Shown piece after piece: positions 6,301 to 124,000 of a stretch of 124,000 nt of DNA. The stretch is from NCBI GenBank assembly GCA_951406725.2, contig OX597815.1, positions 189,864,001 through 189,988,000 of the forward strand. The letters are read 5' to 3'. Under the pieces are notes generated by a model. It was given only the letters and a program-made list of their open reading frames with translations, ran no database searches and had not been told where the DNA came from. Positions within the stretch are counted from its first letter, which is position 1, and each line of letters starts with the position of its first letter. This DNA comes from Octopus vulgaris (Eukaryota). The translations under genes and the position numbers were made by a program.

Positions 6301-6407
6301 AAAACAAAATATAGCTTACTATACATGCTTGATTTTAGGTTTTCTATTTTCCTTGTAATGGGCCTGAGATTTTAGGTAAATACCCAGTTTGTACTTGGAA
6401 TGTGTGT

Positions 6408-6680
6408 GAAGGCGCATGGCTTAGTGGTTAGGGCATTTGGCTCACGATTGTAAGGTCGTGAGTTCGATTCCCGGCGACGCATCGTGTCCTTGAGCAAGAC
6501 ACTTTATTTCATGTTGCTACAGTCCACTCAGCTGGAGTTGTACCAATATTTCTACATTAGGGGTACACGTGTCTGTGGATTGCTCAGTCACTTGCACGTT
6601 AATTTCACAAGCAGGCTGTTCCATTGATCGTATCAGCTGGGACCCTCGTCGTCGTAACTGACAGAGTGCTCCTGCTTGGA
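6408..6680 (+). mobile_element. tRNA-derived CORE-like SINE family C
   Basis: tRNA head then GTGTCCTTGAGCAAGACACTTTATTTC..GCTCCAGTCCACTCAGCTG; copies at 32716-33020, 98270-98575(-), 116780-117110. Confidence 0.75.
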
Positions 6681-11804: not shown

Positions 11805-12000
11805 CGGGAAGGTTTACGAAAATAATCAAAAGGCGAAGGCAGGAGGAGTACAAACAAACAATGTATTAGTATGGCTCTCAGGAATAGAAATAAAACAAGT
11901 CTTTTACGTTTCGAGCCTACGCTCTTCGACAGAAAGATACACAGAAAAGAAACAAGGAGAGAAAAAAATTGCGTGTAGGGGCTAACGATCCAACATGGCG

Positions 12001-24019: not shown

Positions 24020-24026
<7 letters not shown>

Positions 24027-24227
24027 ACCGCGTGTGTACCGTTGGCGATTTTTTCCCTCTGTCTTCCCTTCTCTGGATCTTTCCTTCTCCTATGTTTCCG
24101 ACGAAGAGCTCCGCTCGAAACGTTAGACCCTCCTTCTTTTCTTCTTTCCTGAGCGTCCAATAATACTGTATTTGTTCCACGTCCTCGCGTTGTTGTGTTT
24201 TTTTTTGTGCTTTCATGTTTGGATTAA

Positions 24228-24235
<8 letters not shown>
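24020..24235 (+). mobile_element. PLE pLTR-like family F with hammerhead motif (24094-24128)
   Basis: GUUU-CCGACGA-AGAGC UCC GCUC-GAA ACGU U|AGAC; copies 47368-47570, 111355-111555; flanked by (TA)n. Confidence 0.65.
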
Positions 24236-32665: not shown

Positions 32666-33249
32666 AGAGCAAAATATATGTATGTTTGTATATGTGTATG
32701 TATGTGTATGTGGAGTGAAGGCACATGGTTTAGTGGTTAGGGCATTCTGCTCACGATTGTAAGGTCTTGAGTTCAATTCCTGGCAATGCGTTGTGTCCTT
32801 AAGCAAGAAACTTTATTTCACATTGCTCCAGTCCACTCAGCTGGCAAAAATGAATTGTACCTCTAATTCAAAGGGCCAGCATTGTCACACACTGTGTCAT
32901 GCTGAATCTCCCTGAGAACTTCATTAAGGGTCCAAGTGTCCGTGGAGTGCTCAACCACTTGCCCGTTAATTTCATGAGCATGCTATTCCATTGATTGTAT
33001 CAGCTGGGACCCTTGTTGTCATAACCAACAGAGTGCTCCTGTGTATGTTTGTGTGTGTTTGTTTTTGTCCTCACCACTGCTTGACAAACATTTGAGTTTA
33101 TTTATGTGCCTATAACTTACCAATTCAATTAAGTGACTGATAGTTTTGGGGACAAAATAAGTACTGGGGTTGATTTATCCTATCAAACCATTTAAAGTGG
33201 TGTTCCAGTATGGCCACAGTCCAATGATTGGAACAATTAAAACGTTAAC

Positions 33250-33516
33250 CAATTAACATTATTTACATTTTTTACAATTGACGGATATTTGTCTTCATCT
33301 TGTTTGTTGTTAACACAACGTTTCAGCTGATATACCCTCCCGCCTTCATCAGGTGTCTTGGGGAAATTTCGAACCTAGGTTCTCATTCCTAAGGTATTTT
33401 TCAATGTTGTTGTTGTTGTTATTATTATTATTATTATTATTCAAGTCACTGCCTGGAATCGAACTTGGAATCTTAGGGTTAGTAGCCCGCGCTCTTAACC
33501 ACTATGCTATATGCCC
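33250..33516 (-). mobile_element. Chimeric SINE family E: tRNA head + (AAT)n + PLE-like hammerhead tail
   Basis: Head GGGCATATAGCATAGTGGTTAAGAGCGCGGGC..GTTCGATTCC; hammerhead 33312-33357. Confidence 0.8.
33312..33357 (-). ncRNA. Minimal type I hammerhead ribozyme
   Basis: GACAC-CUGAUGA-AGGCGG..CAGCU-GAA ACGU U|GUGUU. Confidence 0.7.
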
Positions 33517-34074
33517 ATGGGCATATGGAGTAGTTGTTAACATTGTGTTAACAACAAACAAGATGAGGACAAATATTCGTCAAATGTAAATAGTGTAAAT
33601 AATTCCTCATCTCTTAAATATAGAACTGAATGACCAATGAAAATAATACATTTTTACCCTCTTCTTTTACTCTCTAACAAAATGTTACCCACCAATTTTA
33701 ACTATGCTATTTAATATTTCCTCATACTGCACATGACATGAGTAAATATGGTCAGCCCAAGGATAAAGTAAATTGCATTTGTCCAAGGTGCTACACAGCA
33801 GGACTGAAGCTGAGATCATGTGGTTGTGAAGCAAGTTTCTTACCACACAGCCATGCCTGCACCTGGTTAGGAGGTATTGTACATTCTTAAAATAGTTATT
33901 GGCTAGAATTATCTATAATTCTCAACAAATAATTATACAATTTAAAGAAAGAAGAAAAAAATTTATCTTCACCATAGTTTCATCAATAACAGGGCAAAAA
34001 CAAATAACTAAACGCATTAACAAAAACCGAGAGCAGAGAAATAAACAAAAATATACATACATACTTATATATTC

Positions 34075-36190
<2,116 letters not shown>

Positions 36191-36194
36191 TTGT

Positions 36195-37841
36195 AAAAAA
36201 TGAAGTTCGAAAATGCTGCTGTATTATATAATTTTTAATTTTTATATATACATTATAACATGTTTCAGTTCCTGAAATGAACCTTATCAAAAAAAGTTAT
36301 ATATAAAAAGAGACAGCTCATGCCGTCAAACACAAGAAATTCATTTATAATACACAACGGAGTCAGACATCTTAGAGTTCATGTATAGTTGATATATAGT
36401 TCATGTATAGTTGATATATAGTTTGAAGTATATTTCAAAGTGTTCGATGCAGTGGCCCACGGTGGCGATACGTATTCAATGCAAAAAACAGATCAAAGTG
36501 GTGGAAAGCGGTCAATACAGAAGATTGATGTTTCCGAAAGAGCGAGGAATTCATTTTTACCTTAAGCAATTGTGATGACCCATGGTGGAAGTTCGCTGGG
36601 TGGTTCTAGTGATTTTTTGTGAAATGCTTGGTTTTATAATGCCTGTTAGGTGGTCAATCTAGCGTAGCGTGACGTCATCAATGTTTTGACCAATCGTTTC
36701 GTTAGTTGGCTTTAATCAAGTGGAACGGGACGTCATCATTATTTTGACCAATCAGTGCATTATAACTCCCTCTTGTTTGTTTCCTGTCTTGACCAGTCGC
36801 TTCGTTAGTCAAGCATAGCGGGATGTCATTCAGATTCTGCCCAATCACGACTTATAGCTACATTAGATCTGTCCCCTGTCTGTACTTGTTAGGTGACTAT
36901 TCAAGCAGAAAAGGACGTCATCAATATTCTGACTAATGACTGTCCCCTGTTTGTATCCTGTCCATTCTAGCAGAGCTAGATGTCATCAACTTGTTGACCA
37001 ATCAGAATCGGGTCTGACCCTTAGCTGTATCGTATGTATCAGGGTCAGATTTGCACGAAAGAATTTTTTTCCTTTTTTTACTAAGGCATATTTCCGTCAG
37101 AGTGAGTGTCTGTTTGAAGTAGCGGCCGTGGTGAAATTTGGTTCTCCTTTTCGGAGGACTTATCTTTTGTTTTAGTATTCCTGGCCCAGGGTGTTTAAAC
37201 TTGGTCTAAATTTTTTTATGAAATATAGTTCTTTATTTTGGCGTTGTGTGAAGGTTGCGTTGTCACTGAATTTATAGAGCGGGTTAGTTGTAAATTTCGG
37301 ATTTACATTTCCAGCACATCTATCTATGTGTCCGCTGACCGGTATTTTGCGGTAATCAGGGTTTCTAATTTGTGATTTATGCACCGCCATCCTGTTACGT
37401 AAGCTATTTTTTGTATGGCCTATATACTGCCTATTGCAGCCTGCGCATGTTATGACGTAAATTAAGTTTTCTGATGCGCAGGTGAAGTTTGTTCTAATGG
37501 TGAACTGGTGGCCTTGTTCCAGTATAAATTCTGATCCTTCTTTCAAGATGACACAGATTCCGCAGTTGGGCCTTCCACATTTTCTAACTGCTGGTTTTGT
37601 GGTTGATGTTGAGTGCAGTGTAGCTTGGGTTAAAATCCTTTTCAAGGATTTTGGTTGCCGTTTACTTTTAATGATCGTGTGTGTTTCGAGGATCCGGTTC
37701 ATCTTTGGGTCTCCCTTTAGTAGGGCTGTGCTTTGTAGTATGGTGTTGAAGGCCTCATTGTTGAGTGGGTTGTGTGTAGAGATGTAGGGAAGGGTTTTTA
37801 ATTGTTCTTTCTTTTTTGGTTTTGTTTGTCTCAGGTCTTCA
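36195..37841 (-). mobile_element. 5'-truncated Penelope-like element (end of RT thumb, GIY-YIG, 3' region/pLTR)
   Basis: See CDS; hammerhead-like motif at ~36253-36296. Confidence 0.85.
37172..37840 (-). CDS. PLE ORF C-terminus: GIY-YIG endonuclease (open, 5'-truncated)
   Basis: [66 protein letters not shown]. Confidence 0.9.
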
Positions 37842-39040
<1,199 letters not shown>

Positions 39041-42000
39041 TCATCATCATCATCGTTTAGCGTCCGTTTTCCATGCTAGCATGGGTTGGACGGTTCTACT
39101 GGGGTCTGTGAAGCCAGAAGGCTTCATCAGGCCCAGTCAAATCTGGCAGTGTTTCTACGGCTGGATGCCCTTCCTAACGCCAACCACTCCGTGAGTGTAG
39201 TGGGTGCTGTTTACGTGCCACCCGCACTGGTGCCAGACAGAGCTGGCAAACGGCCACGAACGGATGGTGCTTTTTATGTGCCACCGGCACGAGGGCCAGG
39301 CAAGGCTGGCAACGGACACGAAACGGGGCGGTGCTGGCAACGGTCGCAAAACGGAAAGTTCTCTTACATGCCACCGGCACTGGTAACACATCTGCAATTT
39401 CCATTGATCGATTTCCATTGATCGATTTCGATTCTGATCCTCACTTGCCTCAACGGGTCTTCACAAGCAGAGTTTTGACATGCCACCGGCACTGGTAGCA
39501 CATCCGCAATTTCCATTGATCGATTTCGATTCTGATCCTCACTTGCCTCAACACGTCTTCACAAGTAGAGTTTTGTGTCCCAAGAAGGGAAGGTATGCAT
39601 ACGTAGGCCGGCTCCATCCCATGTAGAAGGCCACGGGTTATGGACTCACTTGTCCTGCCGGGTCTTCTCGCGCACAGCACACTTCCAGAGGTCTCGGTCT
39701 CTAGTCATTTCCTCAGTGAGACCTAAAGTTCGAAGGTCGTGCTTCACCACCTCGTCCCAGGTTTTCCTGGGTCTGCCTCTTCCACAGGTTCCCTCAACCG
39801 CTAGGGTGTGGCCCTTTTTCACACAACTATCTTCATCCATTCTCGCCACATGACCATACCAGTGCAAACGTCTCTCTTGCACACCACAACTGATGCTTCT
39901 TAGGTCCAGCTTTTCTCTCAAGGTACTTACACTCTGCCGAGTGTGAGTACCGGCATTACACATCCATCGGAGCATACTGGCTTCATTTCTAGCGAGCTTA
40001 CGCATATCCTCAGCAGTCACGGCCCATGTTTCACTGCCATGTAGCATGGCTGTTCGTACACACGCATCATACAGTCTGCCTTTCACTCTGTGCGAGAGGC
40101 CTTTTGTCACCAGCAGAGGTAAGAGCTCTCTGAACTTTGCCCAAGCTATTCTTACTCTAGCAGTTACACTTTCAGCACACCCGCCCCCGCTGCTGACTTG
40201 GTCACCTAGGTAACGGAAACTATCAACTATTTCTAGTTTTTCTCCCTGGAAAGTGACGGAAGTTGGTCTCAGAGCATTTTCAGTGTTTATTGTTCCTGAG
40301 CATCTGCCACATACAAAAACCATCTTCCTAGTTAGCCTTCCTTTGACATTGCTGCATCTCTTATGTGTCCATAGCTTACACTTGGTGCATCTTATAGAGT
40401 TTCTACCTACACCTTTTCTACAGATCGAGCAGGGCCATCTACCTGAAGGTGTTTGTGATTTGTCTACCTTCCTACTGATTACGACTTTGGTTTTAGCTAG
40501 ATTGACTCTGAGGCCCTTCGATTCTAATCCTTGTTTCCACACCTGAAACTTCTCCTCCAGTTCTGATAGCGACTCAGCAATTAGAGCAAGGTCATCAGCA
40601 TAGAGGAGCTCCCAAGGGCATCCTGTCTTGAATTCCTCCGTTATTGCCTGGAGGACTATGATAAATAGGAGGGGGCTGAGTACTGAGCCTTGGTGGACTC
40701 CTACCTCTACCCGGAATTCTTCACTGTACACATTTCCAACCCTCACCCTACTAGCGGCGTCCCTATACATGGCCCGCACAGCTCTCACTAACCATTCATC
40801 TATCCCTAGTTTCCTCATTGCCCACCAGATAAGGGATCGGGGGACCCTGTCGAAGGCTTTCTCCATGTCAACAAAAGCCAGGTACAGGGGCTTATCTTTG
40901 GCTAGGTATTTCTCCTGCAGCTGCCTTACCAGGAATATAGCATCAGTAGTACTTTTCCCTGGCACAAACCCAAACTGCATCTCATCTAAACTAACTCTCT
41001 CTCTAATTAGTTGGGCTATGACCCTCTCCGTAACCTTCATCACCTGGTCCAACAGCTTGATACCTCTGTAGTTATTTGTATCTAGGGCATCACCTTTACC
41101 TTTGTAGCAGTTGACTATTATACTGCTACACCAGTCATTGGGTATGACCCCTTTGTGTATCACCTGATTAACTATACGGGTGACTAGGCTATAGCCGACA
41201 CTACCAGACATTTTGAGCATCTCTGCAGTGATTCCTGATGGGCCTGGGGCTTTCCCTGTCTTCATGCTTCTAATTGCCTTAGCTACCACGGAACTATCAA
41301 CTCGGATAGCTGGTCCCTCTGTTGGGTCAACATTCGGCAGACTCTCTTTATCCCATTCATTTTCTTCATTCAGCAACCTTTCATAGTGGCATCTCCAAAC
41401 CTCTCTCTTTGCATCCTCATTTAGCGCAAGTGAACCATCTTCCATGCGAACACACTTCTCTCCTACCACATCACGATTCTCTCTCACACACTGTCTTGCA
41501 ACACGAAACACCTCCAGTCTTTGGTCCTCACGGCGCAGAACATTGGCAAATTTTTTCTTATCTGCTTCCCCTCTGGCTAAATAAACCTGTCTCCTAGCTT
41601 CTCTTTTGGCAGTCTGATACAATCCCCTGCTACCCCCATTTTTCCAGACCTTCCAAGCCTGTCTCTTTTCTCTAATAGCCCTGTCTACAATATTGTTCCA
41701 CCACCACGTTATTCTAGGTCGAGAGGGGACTTTGCACCAGCCACAGATCTGGTCAGTGGCTCTCAGCAGGTTGTCCCTTAGAAACGTCCAGCTGTCTTCT
41801 ACCCCCTGTGATGCTCTATCCCCTTCTACTTCGTCAGAGGCTTCAAGTAATATGTCCCTAAATCTCTGTCCATTTGCAGGATCTTTAAGCTTCCAGATCC
41901 TTCTTCTCCATATTTGTCATCTTCTGGTTGTCCTCCTAGTCCTGATCCTAAAGTCACTAACTACCAGTCTATGTTGTGGGGTACATTCTTCACCTGGGAA

Positions 42001-42446
42001 GGTTTTGGCATTTATAAGCAGCCATCTCTCCCTTTGCCTTGTAAGGATGTAGTCAATTTGGCTGGTATGTTGGCCCGATTGGTAAGTGACTAGGTGGCTG
42101 GTAGGTTTCCTGAAGTTAGTGTTGCAAATCATAAGATTATTTGCATCGCAGAACTCCAGCAGCCTGGTTCCCTCCTCGTTGCGGGAGCCATAGCCATAGC
42201 CTCCATGTATGCCATGGAAGCCCCCAGCATGTCGTCCAACGTGACCATTGAAGTCACCAGCCACAAAGATAAGGTCTCTGTCGTTCGTCAACGAGGTAGT
42301 CTGCAGTAGAGTGTCATAGAATCGGTCTTTCTGTCCATCGGGTAGCCCCGACTGAGGAGCATAGGCTGATATAATGGTTGCTAAACTATGATGAAGCACT
42401 AATCTAATCTTAAGTATTCTGTCACATACTCTGATTACCTCAATTA
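39041..42446 (-). mobile_element. RTE-clade LINE, 5'-truncated in the APE domain, (GAT)n tail
   Basis: APE motifs ([20 protein letters not shown]), RT motifs, 3'UTR with ~59-bp units. Confidence 0.95.
39646..42446 (-). pseudogene. RTE APE-RT polyprotein, one premature TGA at ~41917
   Basis: ORFs 41917-43203 and 39646-41622 are in one frame; YRGIKLL, QFGF, DMEKAFDRV, GVHQGSVLSPLLF, LYADD, FRYLG. Confidence 0.95.
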
Positions 42447-42459
42447 ATATATATATATC

Positions 42460-42523
<64 letters not shown>

Positions 42524-42880
42524 GATAGATATATATATATATATATGTAGATATATATATATATATATGTAGATATATATATATATATGTAGATAGATAT
42601 ATATATATATGTAGATAGATATATATATATATATGTAGATAGATATATATATATATAGATAGATATATATATATATATGTAGATAGATATATATATATGT
42701 AGATAGATATATATATATGTAGATAGATATATATATATGTAGATAGATATATATATATGTAGATAGATATATATATATATGTAGATAGATATATATATAT
42801 ATAGATATATATATGTAGATATATATATATATATAGATATATATATGTAGATATATATATATATATAGATATATATATGT

Positions 42881-42915
<35 letters not shown>

Positions 42916-43015
42916 GATAGATATATATATATATATATATGTAGATAGATAGATACATATATATGTAGAGATATATATATATATAGATAGATAGATACTC
43001 ACATACATACATACA
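42447..43015. repeat. (TA)n/(TAGA) compound array
   Basis: Direct reading. Confidence 0.95.
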
Positions 43016-43691
43016 TACGTACATATTATATATCCATATATAAACTCAATTAATTTGAGCAAATGCTTTGCGACAAATATTTTTGCCCAGAAATAAACAG
43101 AAATAATGCAGACAACATCCAAATAAGAATACAAACAAGCGAGCAAAATATATAATGAGACTATACAGTGGAACGGCAATCCTGCACATATAAATGTAGA
43201 CAATGTAAGACATAGCTGAATTCAAAAATATACAATATCTCGTCTCAGTTATTAACAGAGTTCAGAAAAGACAAAAATAATCAAAGAAACAAAACCAAGA
43301 TTAACTATCTTAGAAGTAATCACCGACTCGATGTTCAGCCAAAGTAAAAGAAACTATGCTTCTGATATGCTATAAATATAGCAGACATTTCCTAGACTAT
43401 GTCAATTTTGGTTCATGCCCACATTACAAACTGTGGCTTATAAATCAAAACAAACTACAAATATTTCAAAATCACACTATGAATTATGATAAGCTGTGTG
43501 TTGTACTACAGCAGACACTGACCACCAAATGCATATTATTGCAGTGTAGGAGAAAGCCTTGTCAATATATTTATTTAACCAGTCACACTTTGGGATTATT
43601 TGCTGTCAATGCAGGCCTTCCAAGTTCCCTATATTTCTGGATTATATCTTATTAAAGTTCACCTCTCTCTCTCTCTCCCTCTCCATTTCCT

Positions 43692-47104: not shown

Positions 47105-47860
47105 CTTTACTCTTTTACTTGTTTCAGTCATTTGACTGTGGCCATGCTGGAGCAGTGCCTTTAGTCAAGCAAATAGCCCCTCAGGACTTATTCTATTGGT
47201 CTCTTTTGCCAAACCGCTAAGTTACGGGGACGTAAACACACCAGCATCAGTTGACAAGCGATGTTGGGGGGAGGGAACACAGACACACAAACACATACAT
47301 ACATACACACATACATACATACACACATACATACATACACACACTCATACATATATATATATATATGTGACCGCGTGTGTACCGTTGGCGATTTTTTTTC
47401 CTCTGTCTTCCCTTCTCTGGATCATTCCTTTTCCTATGTTTCCGAGGAAGAGCTCCGCTTGAAACGTTAAACTCTCCTTCTTGCTTTCTTTCCTGAGCGT
47501 CCAATAATACTATTTGTTCCACGTCCTTGCGTTGTTGTGTTTTTTGTGCTTTCTTGTTTGGATTAACTTTATATATATATATATATATATTGTTTTGGGA
47601 TTTGGTTTGCAAGATTCTTTATATGTTAAATAATAAGGCACTAAAAGAGAATGACTCTCCCCAGACACAACAGAATATATATATATATATATGACGGGCT
47701 TCTTTCAGTTTCTGTCTACCAAATCCACTCACAAGGCTTTGGTCGGTCTGAGGCTATAGCAGAAGACACTTGCCCAAGGTGCCATGCAGTGGAACTGAAC
47801 CCGGAACCATGTGGTTCATAAGCAAGCTACTTCCTACACAGCCACTCCTACGCCTATATT
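47105..47860 (-). mobile_element. SINE family A with family F and D pLTR pieces in its internal microsatellite
   Basis: SINE halves separated by 47368-47680. Confidence 0.85.
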
Positions 47861-62466: not shown

Positions 62467-62791
62467 TTAGGAATTGTATTTAAAAATTGTTAATCTATTT
62501 TGTGTTTTGCAGAAATATAACTAGTTTATTGTACATACATTTTAATAACCAACTCTTACATGGACCCCCAGAGACCACAGGGACCCCAGTTGAGGATCAT
62601 AGGTTTAGGGTATTATGAAACAACAGTAGCCACCAGAGAAATCACATTTGTGAAAAAATACATTTGAAGAGCATTCCAGCTTAACTTTGAATGAGTATTC
62701 TGTTGCGTCTGGGGAGGGTCATTTTCTTTTTGTGCCTTATAATTTAACACACTCACCGGTAAAATTTCCACTTATTTCTTATTTTTATTTT

Positions 62792-62831
62792 CCTAAAATT
62801 TTCGTTGCATCTTGCAACCTTTTCAATAGTC
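62792..62831 (-). ncRNA. Minimal hammerhead-like motif with U3:A8 core (family D)
   Basis: GACUA-UUGAAAA-G-GUUGC AAGAU GCAAC-GAA AAUU U|UAGG. Confidence 0.55.
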
Positions 62832-64670: not shown

Positions 64671-66044
64671 TTTTATGTCTGCTTTCCATGCTTGTGTGGG
64701 CTGAATTGCTTGACTGACTGAATCTAACAAGCTGGAGGGTCACATCTTGATGAAATCTCTCAGCTTTCACATGGCTTCTGCAGCAGGTTACTCCTCCTAA
64801 TGCCAACCACTTTACAGAGTGCTTTATTTATTTATTCATTTACTTATCTTTTGGCACCATCTCAGTTGAGGTCACCTTGAAAGTCACAGGAGTCATCAGG
64901 ATCCCTCTTGACTGAGAGGCAGAACAGAAAATAGGAGATAGATTTATGTAAAGTGTTGAAAGGTATATGCGGGGGAGTAAAAAGAATAGCTTTATTTCTG
65001 TGGAAAAGATTCAATGCTACCCTGCATTATATATATAGGTGAGTGGCATGGATGGAGTGGTGCCAGAAAAAAGTGATAAAAATAGTGGTGACAAGATGCC
65101 AGAGCATATCCTCAAGGTACCATATCCAAGAAGGTAAATAGAGGAGAATGTGGAGAGAGAAAGGTCAGTCAGAATGGGTAACTGTTGCAAAAGTGAGTGA
65201 TAGGGTGGTGGGAGTGGTGGATTGAAATAGGGATGGAGGTCGTCAGAGATTGAGAAGCAGTGGGTGCAGTGAATAGTGAACAAGGAGAGGGGTGGTTGAT
65301 GGTAAATATGAGGGGGAGGATGATGGCAAGAAAGCAGTAGGGCGGCGAGCTGGCAGAATCATTAACACGCCAGGTGAAATGCTTAGCGGTATTTCGTCTG
65401 CCGCTACGTTCTCAGTTCAAATTCCACCGAGGTCGACTTTTCCTTTCATCCTTTCGGGGTCGATTAAATAACTACCAGTTACGCACTTGGGTCAATATAA
65501 TCGACTTAATCCATTTGTCTGTCCTTGTTTGTCCCTTCTGGGTTTAGCCCCTTGTGGGTAGTAAAGAAATAGGTACTATATCCAAGAAGGTAAATAGAGG
65601 AAAATGTGGAAAGAGAATGGTCAGTCAGAATGGGTAACCGTTTCAAAAGTGAGTGATAGGATGGTGGGAGTGGTGGATTGAAATAGGGATGGAGTTTGTC
65701 AAGCAGTGGGTACAGTTAAATAGTGAACAAGGATAGGAGTGGTTGATGGTAAATATGATGGGGAGGATGATAGCAAGAAAGCAGAACGGATGTCAAAAGG
65801 TAAAGGCTCAGAAGATTCAAGACTATTGAAAAGGTTGCCAAGATGCAACAAAACTTTTAGGAAAATAAAAATAAAAAGTAAGTGGAAATTTTACTGTTGA
65901 GTGTGTTAAATTATAAGGCACAAAAAGAAAATGACTCTCCCCAGACACAACAGAATACTCATTCAAAGTTAAGCTGGAATGTTCATCAAATGTATTTTTT
66001 CACAAATGGGATTTCTGTGGTGACTACTGTTGTTTCCTACCACA

Positions 66045-66290
66045 GGCAGATGGCGTAGTGGTTAAGAGCGCGGGCTTCTAACTGCAAGATTTCGAGTTCG
66101 ATTCCAAGCAGTGACCTGAACAATGATAATAATAATAACATCGAAAAATACCTTAGGAATGAGAACCCAGGTTCAAAATTTCCCCAAGACACCTGAAGAA
66201 GGCTGGAGGGTATATATCAGCCAAAATGTTGTGTTAACAACAAACAAGATGAGGACAAAAAAATATCCATTGAATGTAAATAATAGAAAT
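66045..66290 (+). mobile_element. Chimeric SINE family E
   Basis: tRNA head, (AAT)n, hammerhead with GAAAC mutated to AAAAT. Confidence 0.8.
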
Positions 66291-67394
66291 ATTTCAATTC
66301 AGAGTAAAAATAGATTGGAGGAAATTTAGGTTGAAAGATTCTGAAATTAATGGAAGAATTTTAATGACTTAATAAGGCTGAAAATTCAAAACAATTAAAG
66401 AAAGATATTTTTATTTTTATTTTGGGGATGTAATTTACTGTAAAACAGATTCAGTGATCAAGAAAATTTAATCTGGTACAGTTTTACTGAGAAAGTTTAT
66501 TATTTAACCTTTAGCAATAACCTCTGTCCTTTTTTTTTTTTTTTTTTTTTTTTGCAGCTTCTTTTCCTGTTGTTACAAAAACCTATTGTTGTACTATACT
66601 TTAAACTTTCCTGTGCTACTTTATCTGTTTCATCAACCTTCTTCTGATTATTTCATTATAACCAAGCCAATAAAGGAGCTTCTGTGAAACTGCTTGGCAT
66701 GCTGGAAATGTGTTGTCTAGTTTAACACCAGTAAACTTCAATAAAGATCCCAGCACCAGTGTTGGGTTAACCATTAAACAAAATAAGAACAAGCTCAGGA
66801 CATCAAGTGAAGCAAAGCCTCACAAAAATAGTAAATGGTTTATGGCACAAAAGAAATCACTTTAAACTTGCTAAAATAATATTTAGGATGCCTTATTTCT
66901 ACTAGGTATAGAAGCAGGCGCAGGAGTGGCTGTGTGGTAAGTAGCTTGTTTACCAACCACATGGTTCCGGGTTCAGTCCCACTGCGTGGCACCTTGGGCA
67001 AGTGTCTTCTACTATAGCCTCGGGCCGACCAAAGCCTTGTGAGTGGATTTGGTAGACGGAAACTGAAAGAAGCCCATCGTATATATGTATATATATATAT
67101 ATATATGCGTGTATGTGTTTGTGTGTCTGTGTTTGTCCCCCTAGCATTGCTTGACAACCGATGCTGGTGTGTTTATGTCCCCGTTACTTAGCAGTAACGA
67201 GACCAATAGAATAAGTACTGGGCTTACAAAAAGAATAAGTCCTGGGGTCGAGTTGCTTGATTAAAGGTGGTGCTCCAGCATGGCCGCAGTCAAATGACTG
67301 AAACAAGTAAAAGAGTAAACAGATTTGTTACATAAGTTTAATTTTGAAAATCCTATCAAAGACTTTGCAATTAAAAAAACTAGAAAGCTTCAAA

Positions 67395-93931: not shown

Positions 93932-96067
93932 GAGAGCAATGATGATGATGAAGACGACAACAATAATGATGATGACGATGATGATGACGACGACAATGAT
94001 GATGATAAGTCTAAAATTTCCTTTTAATTTCATACTATACATACTCTTTTACTCTTTTACTCTTTTACTGGTTTCAGTCATTTGACTGTGGCCATGCTGG
94101 AACACCGCCTTTAGTTGAGCAAATCGACCCCGGGACTTATTCTTTGTAAGCCCAGTACTTATTCTATCGGTCTCTTTTGCCGAACTGCTAAGTGACATGG
94201 ACGTAAACACTCCAGCATCGGTTGTCAAGCAATGCTAGGGGGACAAACACAGACACACAAACATATACACACACATACATATATATACATATACATATAT
94301 ACGACAGGCTTCTTTCAGTTTCCGTCTACCAAATCCACTCACAAGGCATTGGTTGGCCCAAGGCTATAGCAGAAGACACTTGCCCAAAATGCCACGCAGT
94401 GGGACTGAACCCGGAACCATGTGGCTGGTAAGCAAGCTACTTACCACACAGCCACTCCTGCACCAATATACTTATATTGTTTTTGCTAAAATTCTTCTCT
94501 TTGACCCTTTTTTTTGGCAACTTTGCTTGATACCATTTCCAAGTATGAAACCAGTAAGGTTTGGACTTTTAAGAGAAGAATCAGACCAAGAACTAAATAA
94601 TATCAACATTTCTAAAAATTCTTCCCTGTCTTCTAAAGTCAGGTTCTCTTGTTAATTTTGAGCTTCGGCTTTGCAACTCATTAACAGGGAACTTAAAATA
94701 TGTCTGAACCAATGATTTAAATATATATATAAAAACATACTTAAATATACATAAAATATACTTGATTAAAATATACTTCCATGTACTTTAACTTCACTTA
94801 ATTAAATTATACTTAAATATATTTAAAATATATATAATTAAAATATTCTCAAATATACTTAAATTATTCTTAATTAAAATATACTTAAATAAGCTTAAAA
94901 CATAATTAGTGTTTAAGTATGTCTTGTACAGTATTTATGTACTCTTCACTTTCACTTTATGCAAATGAGTTATATCTGGTACAATTTTGTTTAAATTTTA
95001 ATATATAGACTTTTGCTACATTTTTCTGGCATTTCGGAGGAAATTAGAAAGCAAATTTTAATGATAAACAAAACATAGTCAGTTCAATCCACATTTCCAG
95101 TTTAGTGAAATTTAGGTCCTTCATAGGCCTAATTTCACTAAATACATACACATACAACAAGTACATTCATAATACAATTCTATATTTAAGAGATGAGGAA
95201 TTATGTTCATTATTTACATTATTTACATTATTACGTTTATATATTTGTTGTGCTAAACTGGCAAAAAGACCATTCCGAAATACAACAATTATTTACATTA
95301 TTTACATTTGATGGATATTTGTCCTCATCTTGTTTGTTGTTAACACAATGTTCCGGCTGATATACCCTCCAGCCTTCATCAGGTGTCTTGGGGAAATTTC
95401 GAACCTGGGTTCTCATTCCTAAGGTATTTTTCGATGTTATTATTATTATAAAAAGCACTCACTACACTCTCGGAGTGGTGCAGCCTTTCGGCTCAACAGC
95501 CCTCAGTCAACCCATCCAACCCATGCCAGCATGGAAGACGGATGTTAAACGATGATGATGATGATGATGATGATGAGGTTGATGATATACAAATGAAATA
95601 TGCCTTGTACAATTTGCAAATACTTTAATCAGCATCCCTCAGCTAAGTCATTGTGTATACTCTTTACTCTTTACTCTTTACTCTTTTACTTGTTTCAGTC
95701 ATTTGACTGCGGCCATGCTGGAGCACCGCCTTTAGTCAAGCAAATCAACCCCGAGACTTATTCTTTGTAAGCCCAGTACTTATTCTATCGGTCTCTTTTG
95801 CCGAACCGCTAAGTGATGGGGGATGTAAACACACCACAACATCGGTTGTCAAGCAATGCTAGGGGGACAAACACACACAAACACACACACATACAAATAT
95901 ATACATATATATATACATAAATTTAAAAAATTGAGGGAGATAAATTAATATTAATTTTAATATCAATTTAAAACCAGTAGTCCAGCATTCAAAAAATCTG
96001 AGGAGTCAGAGAAAATTCAAATATATGTGTATATTGGCAGGGCTGGCCTGCTAGGTAGCCGGCCAGA

Positions 96068-117530: not shown

Positions 117531-117964
117531 TAGGTCTCTGAGCTGGTATCACCAAGCTTTTGGCAAAATTTGATGCAGATTTTCTGCTCAACTTTTTTTG
117601 TCATGGTCAATGCAATGATCACATGCTACACACCTTCCTTCCAAGCACTACTGTAGACAGCGGAAGAGAGGAAGAATGTTAAAACTTAATGTGCTTGCAC
117701 AGCAGAAATCAAGGTCAATCTTTGCCAAGCAGCTTTACTCTGTGTGCTTTAGATATTTATTGATCAGATCACGTATCTTCTACGACACTGTCATGATTTC
117801 TCACCTCCTACCACAGTGATGGTAGAGAGGTAAATGAAACATGATGGAAGCGGTGAAGCAGAGCGAGAAAGATGAATGAAAGAAGGATGAATGGGGTTTC
117901 ATTCCGTAACCTGAGTTCCACTGATACTGATATAGTAGAGATGGTAGTGGGTTGGGTAGAGGGG

Positions 117965-117967
117965 TGA

Positions 117968-118006
<39 letters not shown>

Positions 118007-118190
118007 TAATAACATCAATAAATACCTTAGGAATGAGTACCCAGGTTTGAAATTTCCCCAAGACACCTGATGAAGGCTGGAGGGTATATCAGCTGAAACG
118101 CTGTGTTAACAACAAACAAGACGAGGACAAATGTCCGTCAAATGTAAATAATGTAAATAATGTAAATAATGTACATAATTCCTCATCCTT
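117965..118190 (+). mobile_element. SINE family E, 3' part with hammerhead (118062-118107)
   Basis: GACAC-CUGAUGA-AGGCUG..CAGCU-GAAACGCU|GUGUU. Confidence 0.75.
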
Positions 118191-120064
118191 GTCGTCATCA
118201 TCTTCATCACATTATCGTCATTGTCATTATCATTGTCACCATCATCATCTTCACTATCATCATTTTCCCTATCATCACCATCATCATCATCATCTACTAC
118301 TTCATCATCATCATCACTATCCTCAACATCATCATCGTCATCATATTCATCATTGTCATCATTCATCATCATCATCATCATTTAACGTCTGCTTTCCATG
118401 CTAGTATGGGTTGGACGGTTCAACTGGGGTCTGGGGAGCCCGAAGGCTGCACCAGGCCAGTCAGATCTGGCAGTGTTTCTACAGCTGGATGCCCTTCCTA
118501 ACGCCAACCACTTCGAGAGTGTAGTGGGTGATTTTATGTGCCACCGACACAGGTACCAGACGAGGCTGGCGAACGGCCACACTCGGATGGTGTTTTTATG
118601 TGCCGCCGACACAGGTGCCAGACGAAGCTGGCGAACGGCCACGCTCGGATGGTGTTTTTATGTGCCACCAACACAGGTGCCAGACAAGGCTAGCAGACGA
118701 CCACGCTCGGATGGTGTTTTTATGTGCCACCGACACAGGTGCCAGACGAGGCTGGCGAACGGCCACGCTCGGATGGTGTTTTTATGTGCCACCGACACAG
118801 GTGCCAGACAAGGCTAGCAGGGTGCCAGACAAGGCTAGCAGATCATTATTGTCATCATTATGGTCACCATCACCATCCCCATTATCATCGTCATAGCCAT
118901 CATCATCATCATCATATTCATCATTGTCTTCATCATTATCGTCACCCTCACCACCACCTTCATCACCATCTTCATCATCATTGTTGTCGTTGTCATCATT
119001 ATTGTCATCATCTTCATCATCAACGTCATCTTCATAGTCATCATCATCATAATTGTCATCATCATCATCATCATCATTAAAGATTATCTTAATACAGAAA
119101 TCACATTTGGATGTCTCCATCAGTTCCTCCTATTGGTATTTCCTTTATTCTGTTAAACCCAAATTCAAAACCCAAAAACTCTACTGGATATTCCCATCGT
119201 CATTAAACTCCCTTCTTTCACAGAAAACATTAGATTTTAAATAAACACATTAAAGCTGAACAAAATTTCAAAAAGAAAATTGATTTATTTTGAAATTTTT
119301 CTGAAAAGAATTTTATTTAATGACTTGTATTTCTGATGTATCGCTATAGCAACCATAAATCAGTCTTTATATAGCTTGTTTTAAATGCAATATGTACATT
119401 ATTTAAATCACACCAACTAATCAGATATTTATATTATAAATATCTGTTTTACTGAGCAGGTTTACATCAAAAATAGATAAAAGTCATTTTTATCATGAAC
119501 TTCACAAATGTATCATTTTAAATAATCAGTGAACAATATGATATATGCTTCTCACTCATACTCCCTCTCTCTCTCTCTCCTCTTTTAGAATTCTTCCTGA
119601 TGTGTCTTTAGAGATTTAACAATAACAAATATGGCATTCTATCTCTTGTAATAATAGTTTATTTGGAAATAATGAATAGTAGTGCAAAATTCAGCTATAA
119701 TAATTTATAGATGTGTAGAGAAGCATATATTTATATATATTGCGGCCTTTTATTAATCTTGGCACCAGGTGCCATAAAATATGAACTGAGAAGTTCAGTA
119801 TAAATTAAGCACAATTACTGCTTAATTTTGTACATGCAGTTGTTGATGTTTTTGTTGTTTAGCTCAGATCACCAGTGATTGAGAAGCGCTTTAACCAAAG
119901 ACATTCCAGCCATAGCCATCCCACTTTTTATTCAATCAGTGTATCTAAGATAACATTTTTTTAATGTGTCATTTATATTTTTAGAGACAGTCAGTTGTGA
120001 TTTGAAGGGGACATTTGGTAGATATTTCTAGCAGAATGAGTAACCACATAGAGGCTTCTTCCTA

Positions 120065-120997: not shown

Positions 120998-122163
120998 AGT
121001 GGTGAGCTGGCAGAAACGTTAGCATGTCGGGCGAAATGCCTAGCAGTATTTCGTCTGCCACTACCTTCTGAGTTCAAATTCCGCCAAGGTCGACTTTGCC
121101 TTTCATCTTTTCGGGGTTGATAAATTAAGTACCAGTTACGCACTGGGGTCGATGTAATTGACTTAATCCGTTTGTCTGTCCTTGTTTGTTCTCTCTGTGT
121201 TTAGCCCCTTGTGGGTAGTAAAGAAATAGGTATTTCATCTGCCTTCCCATTCTGAGTTCAAATTCCACCGAGGTCAACTTTACCTTTCATCCTTTCGGGG
121301 GGCCAATAAATAAAGTACCAGTGACACACTGGGAGGGGGGGGGGGGTCAATATAATCGACTACTCCTCTCCCCCAAAATTTCAGGCCCTTGTCCCTTAGT
121401 AGAAAAGATTATTATTGTTGTTGTTATTGCTATTGTAGTTGCTGTTTTTAATGTCAATTAATATGGCGAGCTCTGAATAAGCTGACTTAGGAACTGAAAG
121501 AAATTAATCACCTTATCACTATTATTTAGTGTTCAACTATATACTCGTTAGATGAGGTTACATTTGTCATTACACAGCCAAGGTAAAATTTGACAGGTGC
121601 AAATAAACACTCCTGCAGTTTAATGCATATAAGATTATTACCAAAGATTTATTTTAATTCTGTTTGTCACAAATTAGACAGCAAATCGTGGGAATCCATT
121701 GTAATAACTAAGAAGCCCCTCAGCTGAAATCATCGTTATTCTGATGATTTGGATCATGTTATATATGTGTATTCTTCACATGTGATGAAAGGTTCTGGTG
121801 AATGTTGAGAAGGTGAAACATAATCAAGGCTTGCTAGTCTCGCTTCCTTGAAATATATGTAGTTATGCATGGATGGATGGATGGTTGAAGGCTGGGAGAT
121901 ATGGAGGATGCATGTATGTATGTATGTATGTATGTATGTATGTACATATAAATCTATGTGAGAAGGCACATGGCTTAGTGGTTAGGGTATTCAAACTCAT
122001 GATCTTGAGGTCATGAGTTCAACTACCAGCAGTGTGTTGTGTTTTTGAGTAAGACACTTTATTTCATAATACAGTTCTATATATTCAGAGATAAGGAATT
122101 ATGTACATTATTTATATTTGACAGATAATTGTCCTCATCTTGTTAACACAACGTTTCGGCTGA

Positions 122164-123365
122164 GGACATTACTCAGATCACTGACAGTGGCTCATGGGTG
122201 GATGTTGTCTACCTTGACTTTGCTAAGGCTTTCAACTCTGTGCCACACAAAAGGCTTATGGTGAAACTCTCTGCAATGGGTGTGGGGGATGACCTTTTTA
122301 ACTGGTTGAAATCCTTCATCCTCAGCCGAAAGGAGGTAGTCACAGTTCTAGGACAGCACTCTACACCATATGAGATGTCATCGGGTGTACCACAGGGATC
122401 TGTCCTTGGTCCCCTCCTGTTTGTGGCATACATTAATGACATCGATGCCAATTTAAAGAATGCCACAGTATTGAAATATGCAGACGACATCAAGCTGTAC
122501 CTTGAAATCAAGAGGACTGATCCTGATGTCTACAACTCTTTCCTGCAATCAGACCTAGACACAATGCAGCAATGGATCACAGACTGGCAACTGAAACTGG
122601 CTGTGGACAAGTGTACCACCATGCATTTTGGGAGAAAAAACCCTGCGTCCACATACTCCCTCCACAACACTGATATCAAGAAATCCTCTTGCGAGCGTGA
122701 CCTAGGCATCACTGTCAGCAGTGATTTGCGTTGGACAAAGCATATCTCTAAAATTGTCAAGAAGGCCGAGGGTGTCTTGGCATCACTCAGCAAGACTTTT
122801 GTTAGCTGCTCTCCAGCCATCTATTTAAAACTGTATACAACTATGGTACGACCACACTTGGAATTCGCATCATCAGTTTGGAATCCCTATCTTGCTCAGA
122901 ACATTGACCTCCTGGAATCTGTCCAGAGACGTGCAACCAAACGCATACCCTCCATCAGACACCTACCATATTCTGAGCGCCTTGTTTCCCTGGGCATGGA
123001 TTCACTGAAGCTCCGGCGTCTGGCAACGGACTTGGTAAACGCCCACAAGGTTATCAACCACCTCACCAACAACAACACTGAACACCTTTTTGATCTCCAT
123101 GTGTCTAACACACGTGGACATGCCTACAAAGTCAGAAAACAACACAGCTCCCATGACTTTCGGAAACATTTTTCACGCTCAGGGTTGCTGAAGCGTGGAA
123201 TAAACTGCCTGCGTCAGTTGTTGACTGCCATGACACTGCATCCTTTAAGGCCCTCATGCTTTCCGAAATCCGCCGAAACTACACCTGATTATATATACAC
123301 TTTAGATGAGTTGTAGTGCACCTGAGCACTGTACACAATTATTATGATTATTATTATTATTATTA
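122164..123365 (+). mobile_element. 5'-truncated CR1-clade LINE with (ATT)n tail
   Basis: See CDS; splits a family E SINE. Confidence 0.9.
122198..123316 (+). CDS. CR1 reverse transcriptase fragment (frame shifts near C-terminus)
   Basis: DVVYLDFAKAFNSVPH..SGVPQGSVLGPLLF..KYADDIKLY..RDLGI..RPHLEFASSVWNP. Confidence 0.9.
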   Translation: MDVVYLDFAKAFNSVPHKRLMVKLSAMGVGDDLFNWLKSFILSRKEVVTVLGQHSTPYEMSSGVPQGSVLGPLLFVAYINDIDANLKNATVLKYADDIKLYLEIKRTDPDVYNSFLQSDLDTMQQWITDWQLKLAVDKCTTMHFGRKNPASTYSLHNTDIKKSSCERDLGITVSSDLRWTKHISKIVKKAEGVLASLSKTFVSCSPAIYLKLYTTMVRPHLEFASSVWNPYLAQNIDLLESVQRRATKRIPSIRHLPYSERLVSLGMDSLKLRRLATDLVNAHKVINHLTNNNTEHLFDLHVSNTRGHAYKVRKQHSSHDFRKHFSRSGLLKRGINCLRQLLTAMTLHPLRPSCFPKSAETTPDYIYTLDEL

Positions 123366-123453
123366 TATACCCTCCAGCCTTCATCAGGTGTCTTGGGGAA
123401 ATTTCAAACCTGGGTTCCCATTCCTAAAGTATTTTTCAATGTTATTATTACCA

Positions 123454-123515
<62 letters not shown>

Positions 123516-123586
123516 ATCACTGCTTGGAATCGAGCTCAGAATCTTGGGGTTATTAGCCCACGTTCTTAACCACTTTGCCATATGCC
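123366..123586 (-). mobile_element. SINE family E, 5' part (3' part at 122090-122163)
   Basis: tRNA head, (AAT)n, first half of hammerhead. Confidence 0.8.
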
Positions 123587-124000
123587 TGTGGGCATAATAA
123601 TGGAAATAATGTACTTCATTTCATGTTGCTCCAGTCCACTCAGCTGTCAAAAAATGAGTTGTACCTGTAATTGAAAGAACCAGCTTTGTCACATTCTGTA
123701 TCAATGTGAATCCGGGTTCAGTCCCACTACATGGCATCTTGGGCAAGTGTCTTCTACTATAGCCTCAGGCCGACCAAAGCCTTGTGAGTGGATTTGGTAG
123801 ACAGAAACTGAAAGAAGCCGTCATAGTCAGGACGCCATGATCGATCGTTAGATCCTACACGCATTTTTTCTCTCCTTTTTTCTCTCCTTTTTTTCTCTCC
123901 TTGTTTCTCTCCTTGTTTCTTTCTGTGTATCTTTCTGTCGAAGAGGGTAGGCTCAAAATGTAAAAGACTTTTTCTATTTCTATTCCTGAGCGCTATACTA

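What the first reader, a model, noticed from the sequence alone, without database searches (positions are those of the whole stretch)
33250..33630. tRNA-headed SINE carrying a Penelope-type hammerhead ribozyme (family E)
Seen: three copies (33250-33516, 66045-66290, 122090-123586) share the same join of a pol III A/B-box tRNA head, an (AAT)n linker and a tail, and two more keep linker + tail (95200-95450, 117965-118190). The consensus tail folds as a complete minimal type I hammerhead: stem I GACAC/GUGUU, CUGAUGA, stem II GGCUG/CAGCC, GAA-ACGU-U cleavage. Here the copy is fused head-to-head to an internally deleted inverted copy (33519-33630), a PLE-like arrangement. Established: PLE pLTRs encode such minimal hammerheads with a palindromic stem III; SINE tails normally come from their partner retroelement. 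Inference: a pol III SINE that parasitises a PLE and may self-process, unlike the usual LINE-partnered SINEs. I cannot confirm that it is undescribed.
Basis: partly seen in the sequence, partly recalled or inferred. Interest (0 to 1): 0.85.

Follow-up and report, generated by a model that had tools for sequence, protein, structure and literature searches.

The report
tRNA-headed SINE with Penelope-type hammerhead tail
This is a decayed copy of a short mobile element that joins a tRNA-like promoter head to a tail carrying a minimal hammerhead ribozyme motif; its insertion scars look like those of Penelope-like retroelements rather than LINEs, which is an unusual but not unprecedented design.

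Summary
The 124-kb window has six copies of one element. Three are full (head, (AAT)n linker, tail), two are 5'-truncated, and one is an inverted, internally deleted copy joined head-to-head at 33519-33631.

- **Head:** canonical pol III A and B boxes at tRNA spacing, but no cloverleaf.
- **Tail:** the consensus is a complete minimal type I hammerhead with every hallmark published for Penelope-like-element (PLE) hammerheads. Every genomic copy, including this one, carries a disabling lesion, or in one case a nested LINE.
- **Insertion scars:** one unit has a 12-bp target-site duplication. In the two units where both ends can be read, an inverted partial copy sits at the 5' end and a ~35-nt extension occurs at one end only. 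These are PLE-style scars.
- **Second family:** an unrelated family in (TA)n tracts carries the same ribozyme design with compensating stem changes.

What is not shown: no PLE gene lies in the window, no copies were found elsewhere, and Repbase/Dfam could not be searched. Self-cleavage is unlikely to matter for propagation, because it would cut the head from the 3' end. Schistosome SMalpha elements are a precedent for pol III SINE-like elements with hammerheads.

Verdict: a new variant of a known kind, of moderate interest.

The parts
33257..33520 (-). Direct full-length copy of the element (unit A): CCAT + head + linker + tail, ending inside the 9-mer repeats with no 3' extension
33442..33520 (-). 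tRNA-like head. A box TAGCATAGTGG at 33499-33509 and B box AGTTCGATTCC at 33455-33465, at canonical tRNA spacing. No cloverleaf.
   Evidence: ARAGORN none; Rfam none
33406..33441 (-). (AAT)n/(AAC)n linker, variable in length between copies
33312..33357 (-). Hammerhead motif of this copy. Stem I 5' strand GACAC 33353-33357; CUGAUGA 33346-33352; extra A 33345; stem-loop II 33325-33344 (carries U10.4>G and C11.1>U); GAAACGUU 33317-33324; stem I 3' strand GUGUU 33312-33316. The predicted cleavage site lies between 33317 and 33316.
33257..33311 (-). 3' part of the tail: AACAACAAACAAGATGAAGAC... followed by degenerate (TGTAAATAA)n repeats
33509..33526 (.). Perfect 18-nt palindrome ATATGCCCATGGGCATAT at the head-to-head junction
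33519..33631 (+). Inverted, internally deleted copy. Head nt 1-22 at 33519-33540 is joined (GTTAA microhomology) to the tail from hammerhead position A14 onward, 33541-33603. The 3' extension follows at 33604-33631. It lacks CUGAUGA and stem II.
33248..33256 (.). Candidate target-site duplication ACCAATTAA, paired with ACCAATGAA at 33633-33641. It matches at 8 of 9 positions and is ambiguous.
66040..66291 (+). Full-length copy (unit B), hammerhead at 66188-66235 with G12>A. The 5' end is fixed by the end of homology with a paralogous flank at 62617-62814.
123365..123612 (-). Unit C, 5' part: 21-nt leader (17 nt of inverted 9-mer repeat plus ATGC), head, long linker, and the tail up to hammerhead loop 2
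122164..123364 (+). Nested 5'-truncated LINE (RVT_1) with an (ATT)n tail, inserted in loop 2 of the hammerhead of unit C. It is not part of the element.
122068..122163 (-). Unit C, 3' part: CAGCCGAAACGUU|GUGUU..., 9-mer repeats and the 3' extension ending ...GAACTGTATT
122056..122067 (.). 12-bp target-site duplication ACTTTATTTCAT of unit C, paired with ACTTCATTTCAT at 123613-123624. The target is a copy of another tRNA-SINE family.
117964..118193 (+). 5'-truncated copy: last 10 nt of head, linker, tail and part of the extension. Hammerhead at 118062-118107 with C11.1>U and U16.1>C.
95171..95449 (-). 5'-truncated copy starting in the linker, with the extension. A 54-nt foreign insert lies at 95234-95287. 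Hammerhead at 95342-95387 with A13>G and G16.2>A.

Best explanation
Positions 33257-33631 are one insertion unit of a non-autonomous retroelement, here called family E. It has three parts: a tRNA-derived head that keeps only the pol III A and B boxes, an (AAT)n linker, and a ~190-nt tail.

The tail behaves like a miniature Penelope pseudo-LTR. It holds ~50 nt of body, a minimal type I hammerhead, ~45 nt more, (TGTAAATAA)n repeats and an optional ~35-nt extension.

**Proposed mechanism (inferred).** Pol III starts at the head and reads through the T4-free element. The tail is then recognised in trans by the reverse transcriptase/GIY-YIG endonuclease of a Penelope-like element elsewhere in the genome. 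Target-primed reverse transcription with template jumps leaves the observed scars: 5' truncations, a short target duplication, an inverted partial copy abutting the 5' end, and an extension at one end only.

**Role of the hammerhead.** It most likely came along as part of the module the PLE enzyme needs, not as a device the SINE uses to cut itself. Cleavage would detach the promoter head from the 3' end. All copies in the window are dead relics decaying mostly at CpG sites.

**Shown:** anatomy, copy set, consensus ribozyme, one target duplication, inverted copies, one-end extension.
**Inferred:** pol III transcription, PLE dependence, passenger status of the ribozyme.
For: **Composite unit**
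- 3 of 3 heads are joined to the tail with identical junctions, and two copies are 5'-truncated.
- (AAT)n lies only on the 5' side of the tails, so the tails did not insert independently into a microsatellite.

**Head**
- The A and B boxes sit at tRNA positions 8-18 and ~52-62.
- No T4 run occurs on the sense strand of any copy.

**Hammerhead**
- The consensus passes a strict descriptor that gives 0 hits in 200 simulated windows.
- The isolated motif folds with stems I and II.
- An unrelated family in (TA)n tracts has the same design. Across the two families 94% of cells pair, 0 of 500 shuffles reach this value, and all five stem I pairs change on both sides.

**Integration scars**
- Unit C has a 12-bp target duplication, proven against three other copies of the target SINE.
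- Inverted material lies inside the unit at the 5' end in units A and C.
- The extension sits at one end only in both units.
- This matches the published description of PLE insertions.

**Tail origin**
- The tail is unlike the 3' ends of both LINE families in the window.
Against: - No PLE open reading frame (GIY-YIG or PLE-type RT) was found among the 128 stop-free frames of at least 95 aa that were scanned, and a local tblastn found only LINE-type RT.
- No pseudo-LTR sharing the tail was found.
- There are only six copies, all from one window. No copies turned up in metagenome or viral collections, or through a protein-space search with the antisense open frame.
- Short 3' tandem repeats are also typical of CR1/L2-type LINE tails.
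- The target duplication of unit A is ambiguous, and none was found for units B, D and E.
- Unit B shows no inverted leader.
- Rfam does not recognise the motif.
- In the full tail the minimum-energy fold forms stem II but not stem I.
Confidence: 0.55

Rival explanations
1. It is an ordinary LINE-partnered tRNA SINE of the stringent type. The tail, with its stem-loop and (TGTAAATAA)n end, comes from the 3' UTR of a CR1/L2-like LINE that is not in this window. The hammerhead-like motif is inherited baggage with no link to PLEs.
For: - 3' short tandem repeats, 5' truncation and a 12-bp target duplication all fit LINE-mediated insertion.
- A 9-bp hairpin AGAUGAGGA/UCCUCAUCU brackets the repeats.
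- Some LINEs and SINEs are reported to carry ribozymes.
Against: - Both LINE families in the window have unrelated 3' ends.
- The motif has all the PLE-specific hammerhead hallmarks.
- 3' ends vary between copies, with or without the extension, and the extension lies at only one end of a unit that also holds an inverted duplicate. This is described for PLEs, not for LINE-mobilised SINEs.
Confidence: 0.25
2. It is not one element but a nesting. A short PLE-derived hammerhead element inserted repeatedly and independently into the (AAT)n tail of a simple tRNA SINE.
For: - PLEs prefer microsatellite targets.
- The second hammerhead family in the window sits inside (TA)n tracts.
Against: - All 3 heads carry the tail.
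- The junctions are identical in every copy.
- One truncated copy keeps exactly the last 10 nt of the head.
- (AAT)n is never present 3' of the tail.
- Unit C is bounded as a whole by one target duplication.
- A single ancestral nesting that then amplified is compatible with the best explanation.
Confidence: 0.05
3. It is a retrozyme-like element. Transcripts self-cleave at the hammerhead, are circularised, and are copied from RNA circles.
For: - The hammerhead consensus is intact.
- Animal non-LTR retrozymes are thought to be PLE dependants.
Against: - There is no tandem arrangement, and only one ribozyme per unit.
- Copies are colinear, not circularly permuted.
- All copies span the cleavage site.
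Confidence: 0.05
4. The hammerhead is a chance resemblance in an AT-rich repeat.
For: - Rfam gives no hit.
- No single genomic copy is intact.
Against: - The descriptor gives 0 hits in ~50 Mb of simulated sequence.
- Two unrelated families share the architecture with compensatory stems.
- The lesions are scattered, mostly CpG transitions that differ from copy to copy, so the ancestor was intact.
Confidence: 0.03

Closest known systems
SMalpha / Sjalpha SINE-like retroposons of schistosomes (Ferbeyre et al. 1998; Laha et al. 2000, as summarised in PMC6765202 and PMC8490949)
   Same: Both are short, non-coding, pol III-type elements with a promoter followed by a type I hammerhead that has a weak helix III. 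Both are dispersed in an invertebrate genome.
   Different: - SMalpha carries a canonical hammerhead with loop-loop contacts and occurs largely in tandem arrays, where dimers can form. Family E has the minimal PLE-type motif, is dispersed as single units, and has a microsatellite linker and PLE-like insertion scars.
Minimal hammerheads of Penelope-like elements and their dispersed solo copies (Cervera & de la Pena 2014, PMC4209133)
   Same: The ribozyme architecture matches feature by feature: CUGANGA and GAAA boxes, an extra nucleotide after A9, the G10.1-C11.1 pair, a palindromic CG at 15.2-16.2, helix II of 6 bp and helix I of 5 bp.
   Different: Those motifs sit in the pseudo-LTRs of RT/endonuclease-coding PLEs or as orphan fragments. 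Here the motif is fused downstream of a tRNA-type pol III head and propagates as a SINE.
Animal non-LTR retrozymes and short non-autonomous Penelope elements (PMC7229834, PMC7761336, bioRxiv 10.64898/2026.07.22.740005, PMC6685494)
   Same: These are non-coding hammerhead-bearing elements proposed to depend on PLE enzymes.
   Different: Retrozymes are tandem arrays expressed as circular RNAs and have no pol III head. Family E is not tandem and is not permuted.
tRNA-derived SINEs with LINE-derived tails (the SINE2/tRNA class, including the tRNA-derived octopus SINEs of Ohshima & Okada 1994, cited)
   Same: Both have a tRNA-type head with A and B boxes, a length of ~300 bp, 5' truncations and target duplications.
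   Different: The tail is not a recognisable LINE 3' end, and the 3' ends and 5' leaders vary in a PLE-like way. Identity with a catalogued SINE could not be checked.

Membership tests
tRNA-derived SINE | 5' head with internal pol III A and B boxes at tRNA spacing | tested here: met
   The A box T(A/G)GC(A/G)(T/A)AGTGG lies at head nt 8-18 and the B box (A/G)AG(T/C)TCGATTCC at ~51-62, in 3 of 3 heads.
tRNA-derived SINE | Head recognisably homologous to a tRNA (cloverleaf or a tRNA model hit) | tested here: not met
   ARAGORN finds nothing in the window, the three heads or their consensus, even with relaxed thresholds. The Rfam tRNA model gives no hit at E<=10. Only an anticodon-loop-like CU-NNN-AA and partial D and T stems can be read by eye.
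tRNA-derived SINE | Short, non-coding, dispersed, multi-copy, with target-site duplications and 5' truncations | tested here: met
   Six copies at 74-94% identity. Unit C has a 12-bp duplication with the empty site shown. Two copies are 5'-truncated. The duplications of the other units were not resolved.
tRNA-derived SINE | 3' tail shared with an autonomous partner retroelement | not testable with these tools
   The tail matches no LINE 3' end in the window. No eukaryotic genome or repeat library was available.
PLE-type minimal hammerhead | Catalytic boxes CUGANGA and GAAA with helices I and II in type I order | tested here: met
   Met by the consensus. Among the genomic copies only the LINE-split one keeps both halves intact.
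PLE-type minimal hammerhead | Unpaired nucleotide between A9 and G10.1; G10.1-C11.1 pair; palindromic 15.2-16.2; helix II of 6-8 bp; helix I of 4-5 bp | tested here: met
   The consensus has an extra A, a G-C closing pair, CG at 15.2-16.2, a 6-bp helix II and a 5-bp helix I. The criteria come from PMC4209133.
PLE-type minimal hammerhead | Located in the pseudo-LTR of an RT/GIY-YIG element | not testable with these tools
   No PLE coding sequence was found in the window, and none could be fetched.
PLE-type minimal hammerhead | Self-cleavage (as dimers) | not testable with these tools
   This needs in vitro transcription. Folding only shows that the motif is compatible with the structure.
Penelope-like insertion architecture (Craig et al. 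2021) | Inverted 5'-truncated copy immediately adjacent to the 5' end | tested here: met
   Unit A has a 113-bp inverted copy with a perfect 18-nt palindromic junction. Unit C has a 21-nt inverted leader inside the target duplication. Unit B has none.
Penelope-like insertion architecture (Craig et al. 2021) | 30-40-bp extension present at only one end of the insertion unit | tested here: met
   The ~35-nt extension sits on the inverted arm only in unit A and on the direct arm only in unit C.
Penelope-like insertion architecture (Craig et al. 2021) | Partial tandem copies forming pseudo-LTRs | tested here: not met
   No head-to-tail tandem of the element was seen.
Animal non-LTR retrozyme | Tandem repeats, each with a hammerhead, giving circular RNAs | tested here: not met
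   Copies are dispersed and single, with one ribozyme per unit. RNA could not be tested.
Rfam Hammerhead families | Score at or above the curated threshold | tested here: not met
   No hit at the gathering threshold in the whole window, nor at E<=10 in three copies. The consensus itself could not be submitted to the tool.

The most novel reading that the evidence does not exclude
Family E is a true SINE whose autonomous partner is a Penelope-like element rather than a LINE. A pol III transcript would gain access to the PLE reverse transcriptase and GIY-YIG endonuclease by carrying a miniature pseudo-LTR with its hammerhead. That would make the hammerhead module, cleaving or not, the recognition handle for PLE retrotransposition.
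Probability: 0.4. Interest if true: 0.7.

Novelty: new variant of a known kind. Interest (0 to 1): 0.5.

Why it matters
SINEs are textbook parasites of LINEs, and how PLEs choose their RNA templates is unknown. A short pol III-driven element that is copied by PLE machinery would give a compact substrate of ~300 nt. With it one could test which part of a pseudo-LTR the PLE enzyme recognises: the hammerhead fold, the repeats or the extension. One could also test whether the ribozyme has to cleave.

It would also add a partner class to SINE classification. It may explain part of the large population of orphan minimal hammerheads scattered through invertebrate genomes.

If instead a LINE with this tail exists, the element is an ordinary SINE that happens to carry a ribozyme fossil.

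Tried and rejected
1. **Rfam and ARAGORN.** Neither found a tRNA or a hammerhead. I therefore relied on explicit descriptors and box positions.
2. **External copies.** Two metagenome scans and one viral scan with invariant tail strings gave 0 hits. A protein-space search with four antisense open frames spanning hammerhead, linker and head also gave 0 hits. Sequence strings were absent from the paper library.
3. **PLE genes in the window.** Pfam on 128 stop-free frames of at least 95 aa found LINE RT and endonuclease, a Mos1 HTH and DUF7083, but no GIY-YIG. A local tblastn with the LINE proteins mapped only LINE-type RT fragments.
4. **Organism.** The LINE RT search returned only 50-74% relatives from anonymous assemblies. 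The repeat content recalls octopod genomes from memory, which is a lead and not a test.
5. **Inverted or tandem leader upstream of copy 66040.** The best alignment is no better than shuffles.
6. **Head-tail homology (a second tRNA remnant in the tail).** Not significant.
7. **The 230-bp tandem array at 86803-89147 as a retrozyme.** It has no CUGANGA box.
8. **Empty site for unit A.** The flanks belong to other repeats in a different arrangement, so this was uninformative.

Full report
**1. What is there**

The window is 36% G+C and packed with eukaryotic repeats. Read on the minus strand, 33520->33257 has three parts:
- a 79-nt head, CCAT-GGGCATATAGCATAGTGGTTAAGAGCGCGGGCTACTAACCCTAAGATTCCAAGTTCGATTCCAGGCAGTGACTTG;
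- a 36-nt (AAT)n/(AAC)n linker;
- a 149-nt tail.

- two more full copies, 66040-66291 (+) and 123612-123365 plus 122163-122068 (-);
- two 5'-truncated copies, 117964-118193 (+) and 95449-95171 (-);
- the inverted partial copy, 33519-33631 (+).

Every head in the window is followed by the linker and the tail. The junctions GTGAC(C/T)TGAAT... and ...AAC-AT(C/T)GAAAAATACC are the same in all copies. One truncated copy keeps exactly the last 10 nt of the head. (AAT)n is never found 3' of a tail. The composite, not its parts, is therefore the unit that spread.

**2. The head**

The A box (TGGCGTAGTGG in the consensus) occupies head positions 8-18, and the B box (GAGTTCGATTCC) sits about 43 nt further on. 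That is the layout of a tRNA gene. An anticodon-loop-like CU-NNN-AA can be read by eye.

The cloverleaf, however, is gone:
- ARAGORN finds nothing in the window, the three heads or their consensus.
- The Rfam tRNA model gives no hit at E<=10.

The sense strand of every copy lacks a T4 run, apart from a foreign insert. This is compatible with pol III read-through but only weakly informative, because 20% of shuffles also lack one. Weak profile hits link the head to the heads of another tRNA-type SINE family in the window.

**3. The hammerhead**

The CpG-corrected majority consensus of the tail is GACAC-CUGAUGA-A-GGCUGG-AGGGUAUA-UCAGCC-GAA-A-CG-U-U|GUGUU. It passes a strict minimal-hammerhead descriptor. 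That descriptor found nothing in the real window and nothing in 200 second-order Markov simulations of it, about 50 Mb counting both strands.

Beyond the two catalytic boxes, the consensus has all the features that Cervera and de la Pena (PMC4209133) give as signatures of PLE hammerheads:
- an unpaired nucleotide between A9 and G10.1;
- the G10.1-C11.1 pair;
- a palindromic 15.2-16.2 dinucleotide in place of a real helix III;
- a long helix II and a short helix I.

The isolated motif folds with stems I and II. In the whole tail only stem II appears in the minimum-energy fold.

No genomic copy is an intact ribozyme:

| Copy | Lesion |
|---|---|
| 33357-33312 (the finding) | U10.4>G and C11.1>U |
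| 66188-66235 | G12>A |
| 118062-118107 | C11.1>U and U16.1>C |
| 95387-95342 | A13>G and G16.2>A |
| unit C | both halves intact, but a 1.2-kb LINE sits in loop 2 |

The lesions differ from copy to copy and are mostly CpG transitions, which is what neutral decay of an intact ancestor would give. Rfam does not report a hammerhead in any copy.

**4. An independent witness in the same window**

Relaxing the descriptor by one core mismatch turned up a second, unrelated family, here called G. Its copies lie at 24020-24235, 47365-47574 and 111355-111553. A sister subfamily lies at 11830-12000 (-) and 123833-124000.

G elements are ~200 bp, sit inside (TA)n tracts, and have T-runs and no pol III boxes. 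The consensus, GUUU-CUGACGA-A-GAGC-UCC-GCUC-GAAA-CG-U-U|AAAC, also passes the strict descriptor.

I aligned the hammerheads of E and G and counted pairs:
- 94% of cells pair, against 75% in shuffles (0 of 500 shuffles reach it) and 26-49% when partners are slid.
- All five stem I pairs change on both sides.
- One stem I pair shows A-U, C-G and G-C.

What the two families share is the fold and the core, not the sequence. This also shows that short hammerhead-bearing, microsatellite-seeking elements, of the kind reported for PLEs and their derivatives, exist in this genome.

**5. Insertion anatomy**

*Unit C.* It inserted into a copy of another tRNA-SINE family. Alignment of the two flanks with three other copies of that family shows an 11-12-bp overlap. 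This gives a target-site duplication, ACTTTATTTCAT at 122056-122067 and ACTTCATTTCAT at 123613-123624. Inside the duplication the unit starts with a 21-nt leader. It consists of 17 nt that match the 9-mer repeat in inverted orientation at 16 of 17 positions, followed by ATGC, the reverse complement of head nt 3-6 (GCAT). The unit ends with the 9-mer repeats followed by CATAATTCC(T/C)TATCTCT...GAACTGTATT.

*Unit A (the finding).* The direct copy ends within the 9-mer repeats without the extension. The inverted copy consists of head nt 1-22 joined at a GTTAA microhomology to the tail from hammerhead position A14 onward, and it does carry the extension. The two copies meet in a perfect 18-nt palindrome. 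A 9-bp duplication matching at 8 of 9 positions is possible but ambiguous.

In both units where it can be judged, there is inverted material at the 5' end and the ~35-nt extension at one end only. Craig et al. (PMC8557442) describe exactly these features for PLE insertions: frequent 5' truncation, an inverted 5'-truncated copy adjacent to the 5' end, and a 30-40-bp extension often present at only one end. The partial tandems they also describe were not seen. Unit B has no detectable leader.

**6. What could not be shown**

- No GIY-YIG or PLE-type RT was found among the 128 stop-free frames of at least 95 aa scanned with Pfam. A local tblastn with the LINE proteins mapped only LINE-type RT fragments.
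- Only two LINE families are present, and their 3' ends are unrelated to the tail.
- No further copies were found in metagenome or viral collections.
- A protein-space search using the open antisense frame that spans hammerhead, linker and head found nothing.
- No eukaryotic genome or repeat library is available here. The partner, the genome-wide consensus and prior description therefore remain open.

**7. Mechanism**

The best reading is a pol III-transcribed composite whose tail is a miniature pseudo-LTR that PLE enzymes copy in trans (confidence about 0.55). I rate the existence of the composite SINE with a hammerhead-consensus tail at about 0.85.

I do not think self-cleavage drives propagation, for four reasons:
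- Each unit has a single ribozyme whose helix III is only the palindrome ACGU, so two RNAs would have to pair.
- The inverted copy lies on the other strand and lacks the catalytic half.
- Cleavage at GUU|G would separate the promoter-bearing head from the ~110-nt 3' part.
- All six copies are contiguous across that site.

The ribozyme is more likely retained because it is part of what the PLE enzyme recognises. Published PLE hammerheads cleave poorly in vitro. The palindromic junction and the internal deletion at a microhomology fit template jumps between cDNAs, but that is inference.

**8. Comparison with what is known**

- Pol III SINE-like elements with hammerheads are known from schistosomes, as SMalpha and Sjalpha.
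- Orphan minimal hammerheads and PLE-dependent non-coding elements are known as retrozymes and short non-autonomous Penelope elements.
- Full-text searches found no tRNA-headed SINE with a PLE-type tail. Repbase, Dfam and SINEBase could not be queried, and subscription papers are not covered.

I therefore class this as a new variant of a known kind, with moderate interest (0.5).

Noticed in passing
24020-24235 (+), 47365-47574 (+), 111355-111553 (+); sister subfamily 11830-12000 (-), 123833-124000 (+): A second family of ~200-bp non-coding elements lies inside (TA)n tracts. Its consensus is also a minimal hammerhead (GUUU-CUGACGA-A-GAGC-UCC-GCUC-GAAA-CG-UU|AAAC). The sister subfamily has CUGUCGA (A6>U) in both copies, so it may be a non-canonical or dead core.
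   Followed up: partly
122164-123364 (+); related fragment 75301-75569 (+): A 5'-truncated LINE (RVT_1) with an (ATT)n 3' tail is inserted exactly in loop 2 of the only otherwise intact hammerhead copy.
   Followed up: partly
39649-43221 (-), 3' UTR down to ~39050: A near-complete LINE has APE endonuclease, RT and a PHD finger. Its 3' UTR holds 62-65-nt tandem repeats and ends ...ccaacccatgctagcatggaaaacggacgctaaac(gat)n. This is the source of many 3' fragments scattered through the window, for example 95452-95540.
   Followed up: partly
6405-6560, 32715-32900, 116785-116940, 121958-122067 + 123613-123700: Another tRNA-type SINE family begins GGCACATGGCTTAGTGGTTAGGG... and continues ...GACACTTTATTTCATGTTGCTCCAGTCCACTCAGCTGG. 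One copy is the target that unit C split.
   Followed up: partly
86803-89147: A 230-bp unit is repeated 10 times at 98% identity. It is built from a SINE-like sequence and contains GAAACGUU but no CUGANGA box, so it is not a retrozyme array.
   Followed up: partly
34051-36190 and 37841-39041: Very long (AT)n tracts of 2.1 kb and 1.2 kb lie just to the right of the finding. They produce stop-free 'ORFs' in several frames.
   Followed up: no
95234-95287: A 54-nt foreign insert with short inverted ends (TGTTGT...ACAACA) lies inside the 9-mer repeats of copy 95449-95171. It carries the only T5 run in any copy.
   Followed up: no
62617-62814 (-) vs 65840-66039 (+): A paralogous stretch of 93.5% identity ends exactly at the 5' end of copy 66040-66291. 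The other copy continues with unrelated sequence, so it is not a simple empty site.
   Followed up: partly
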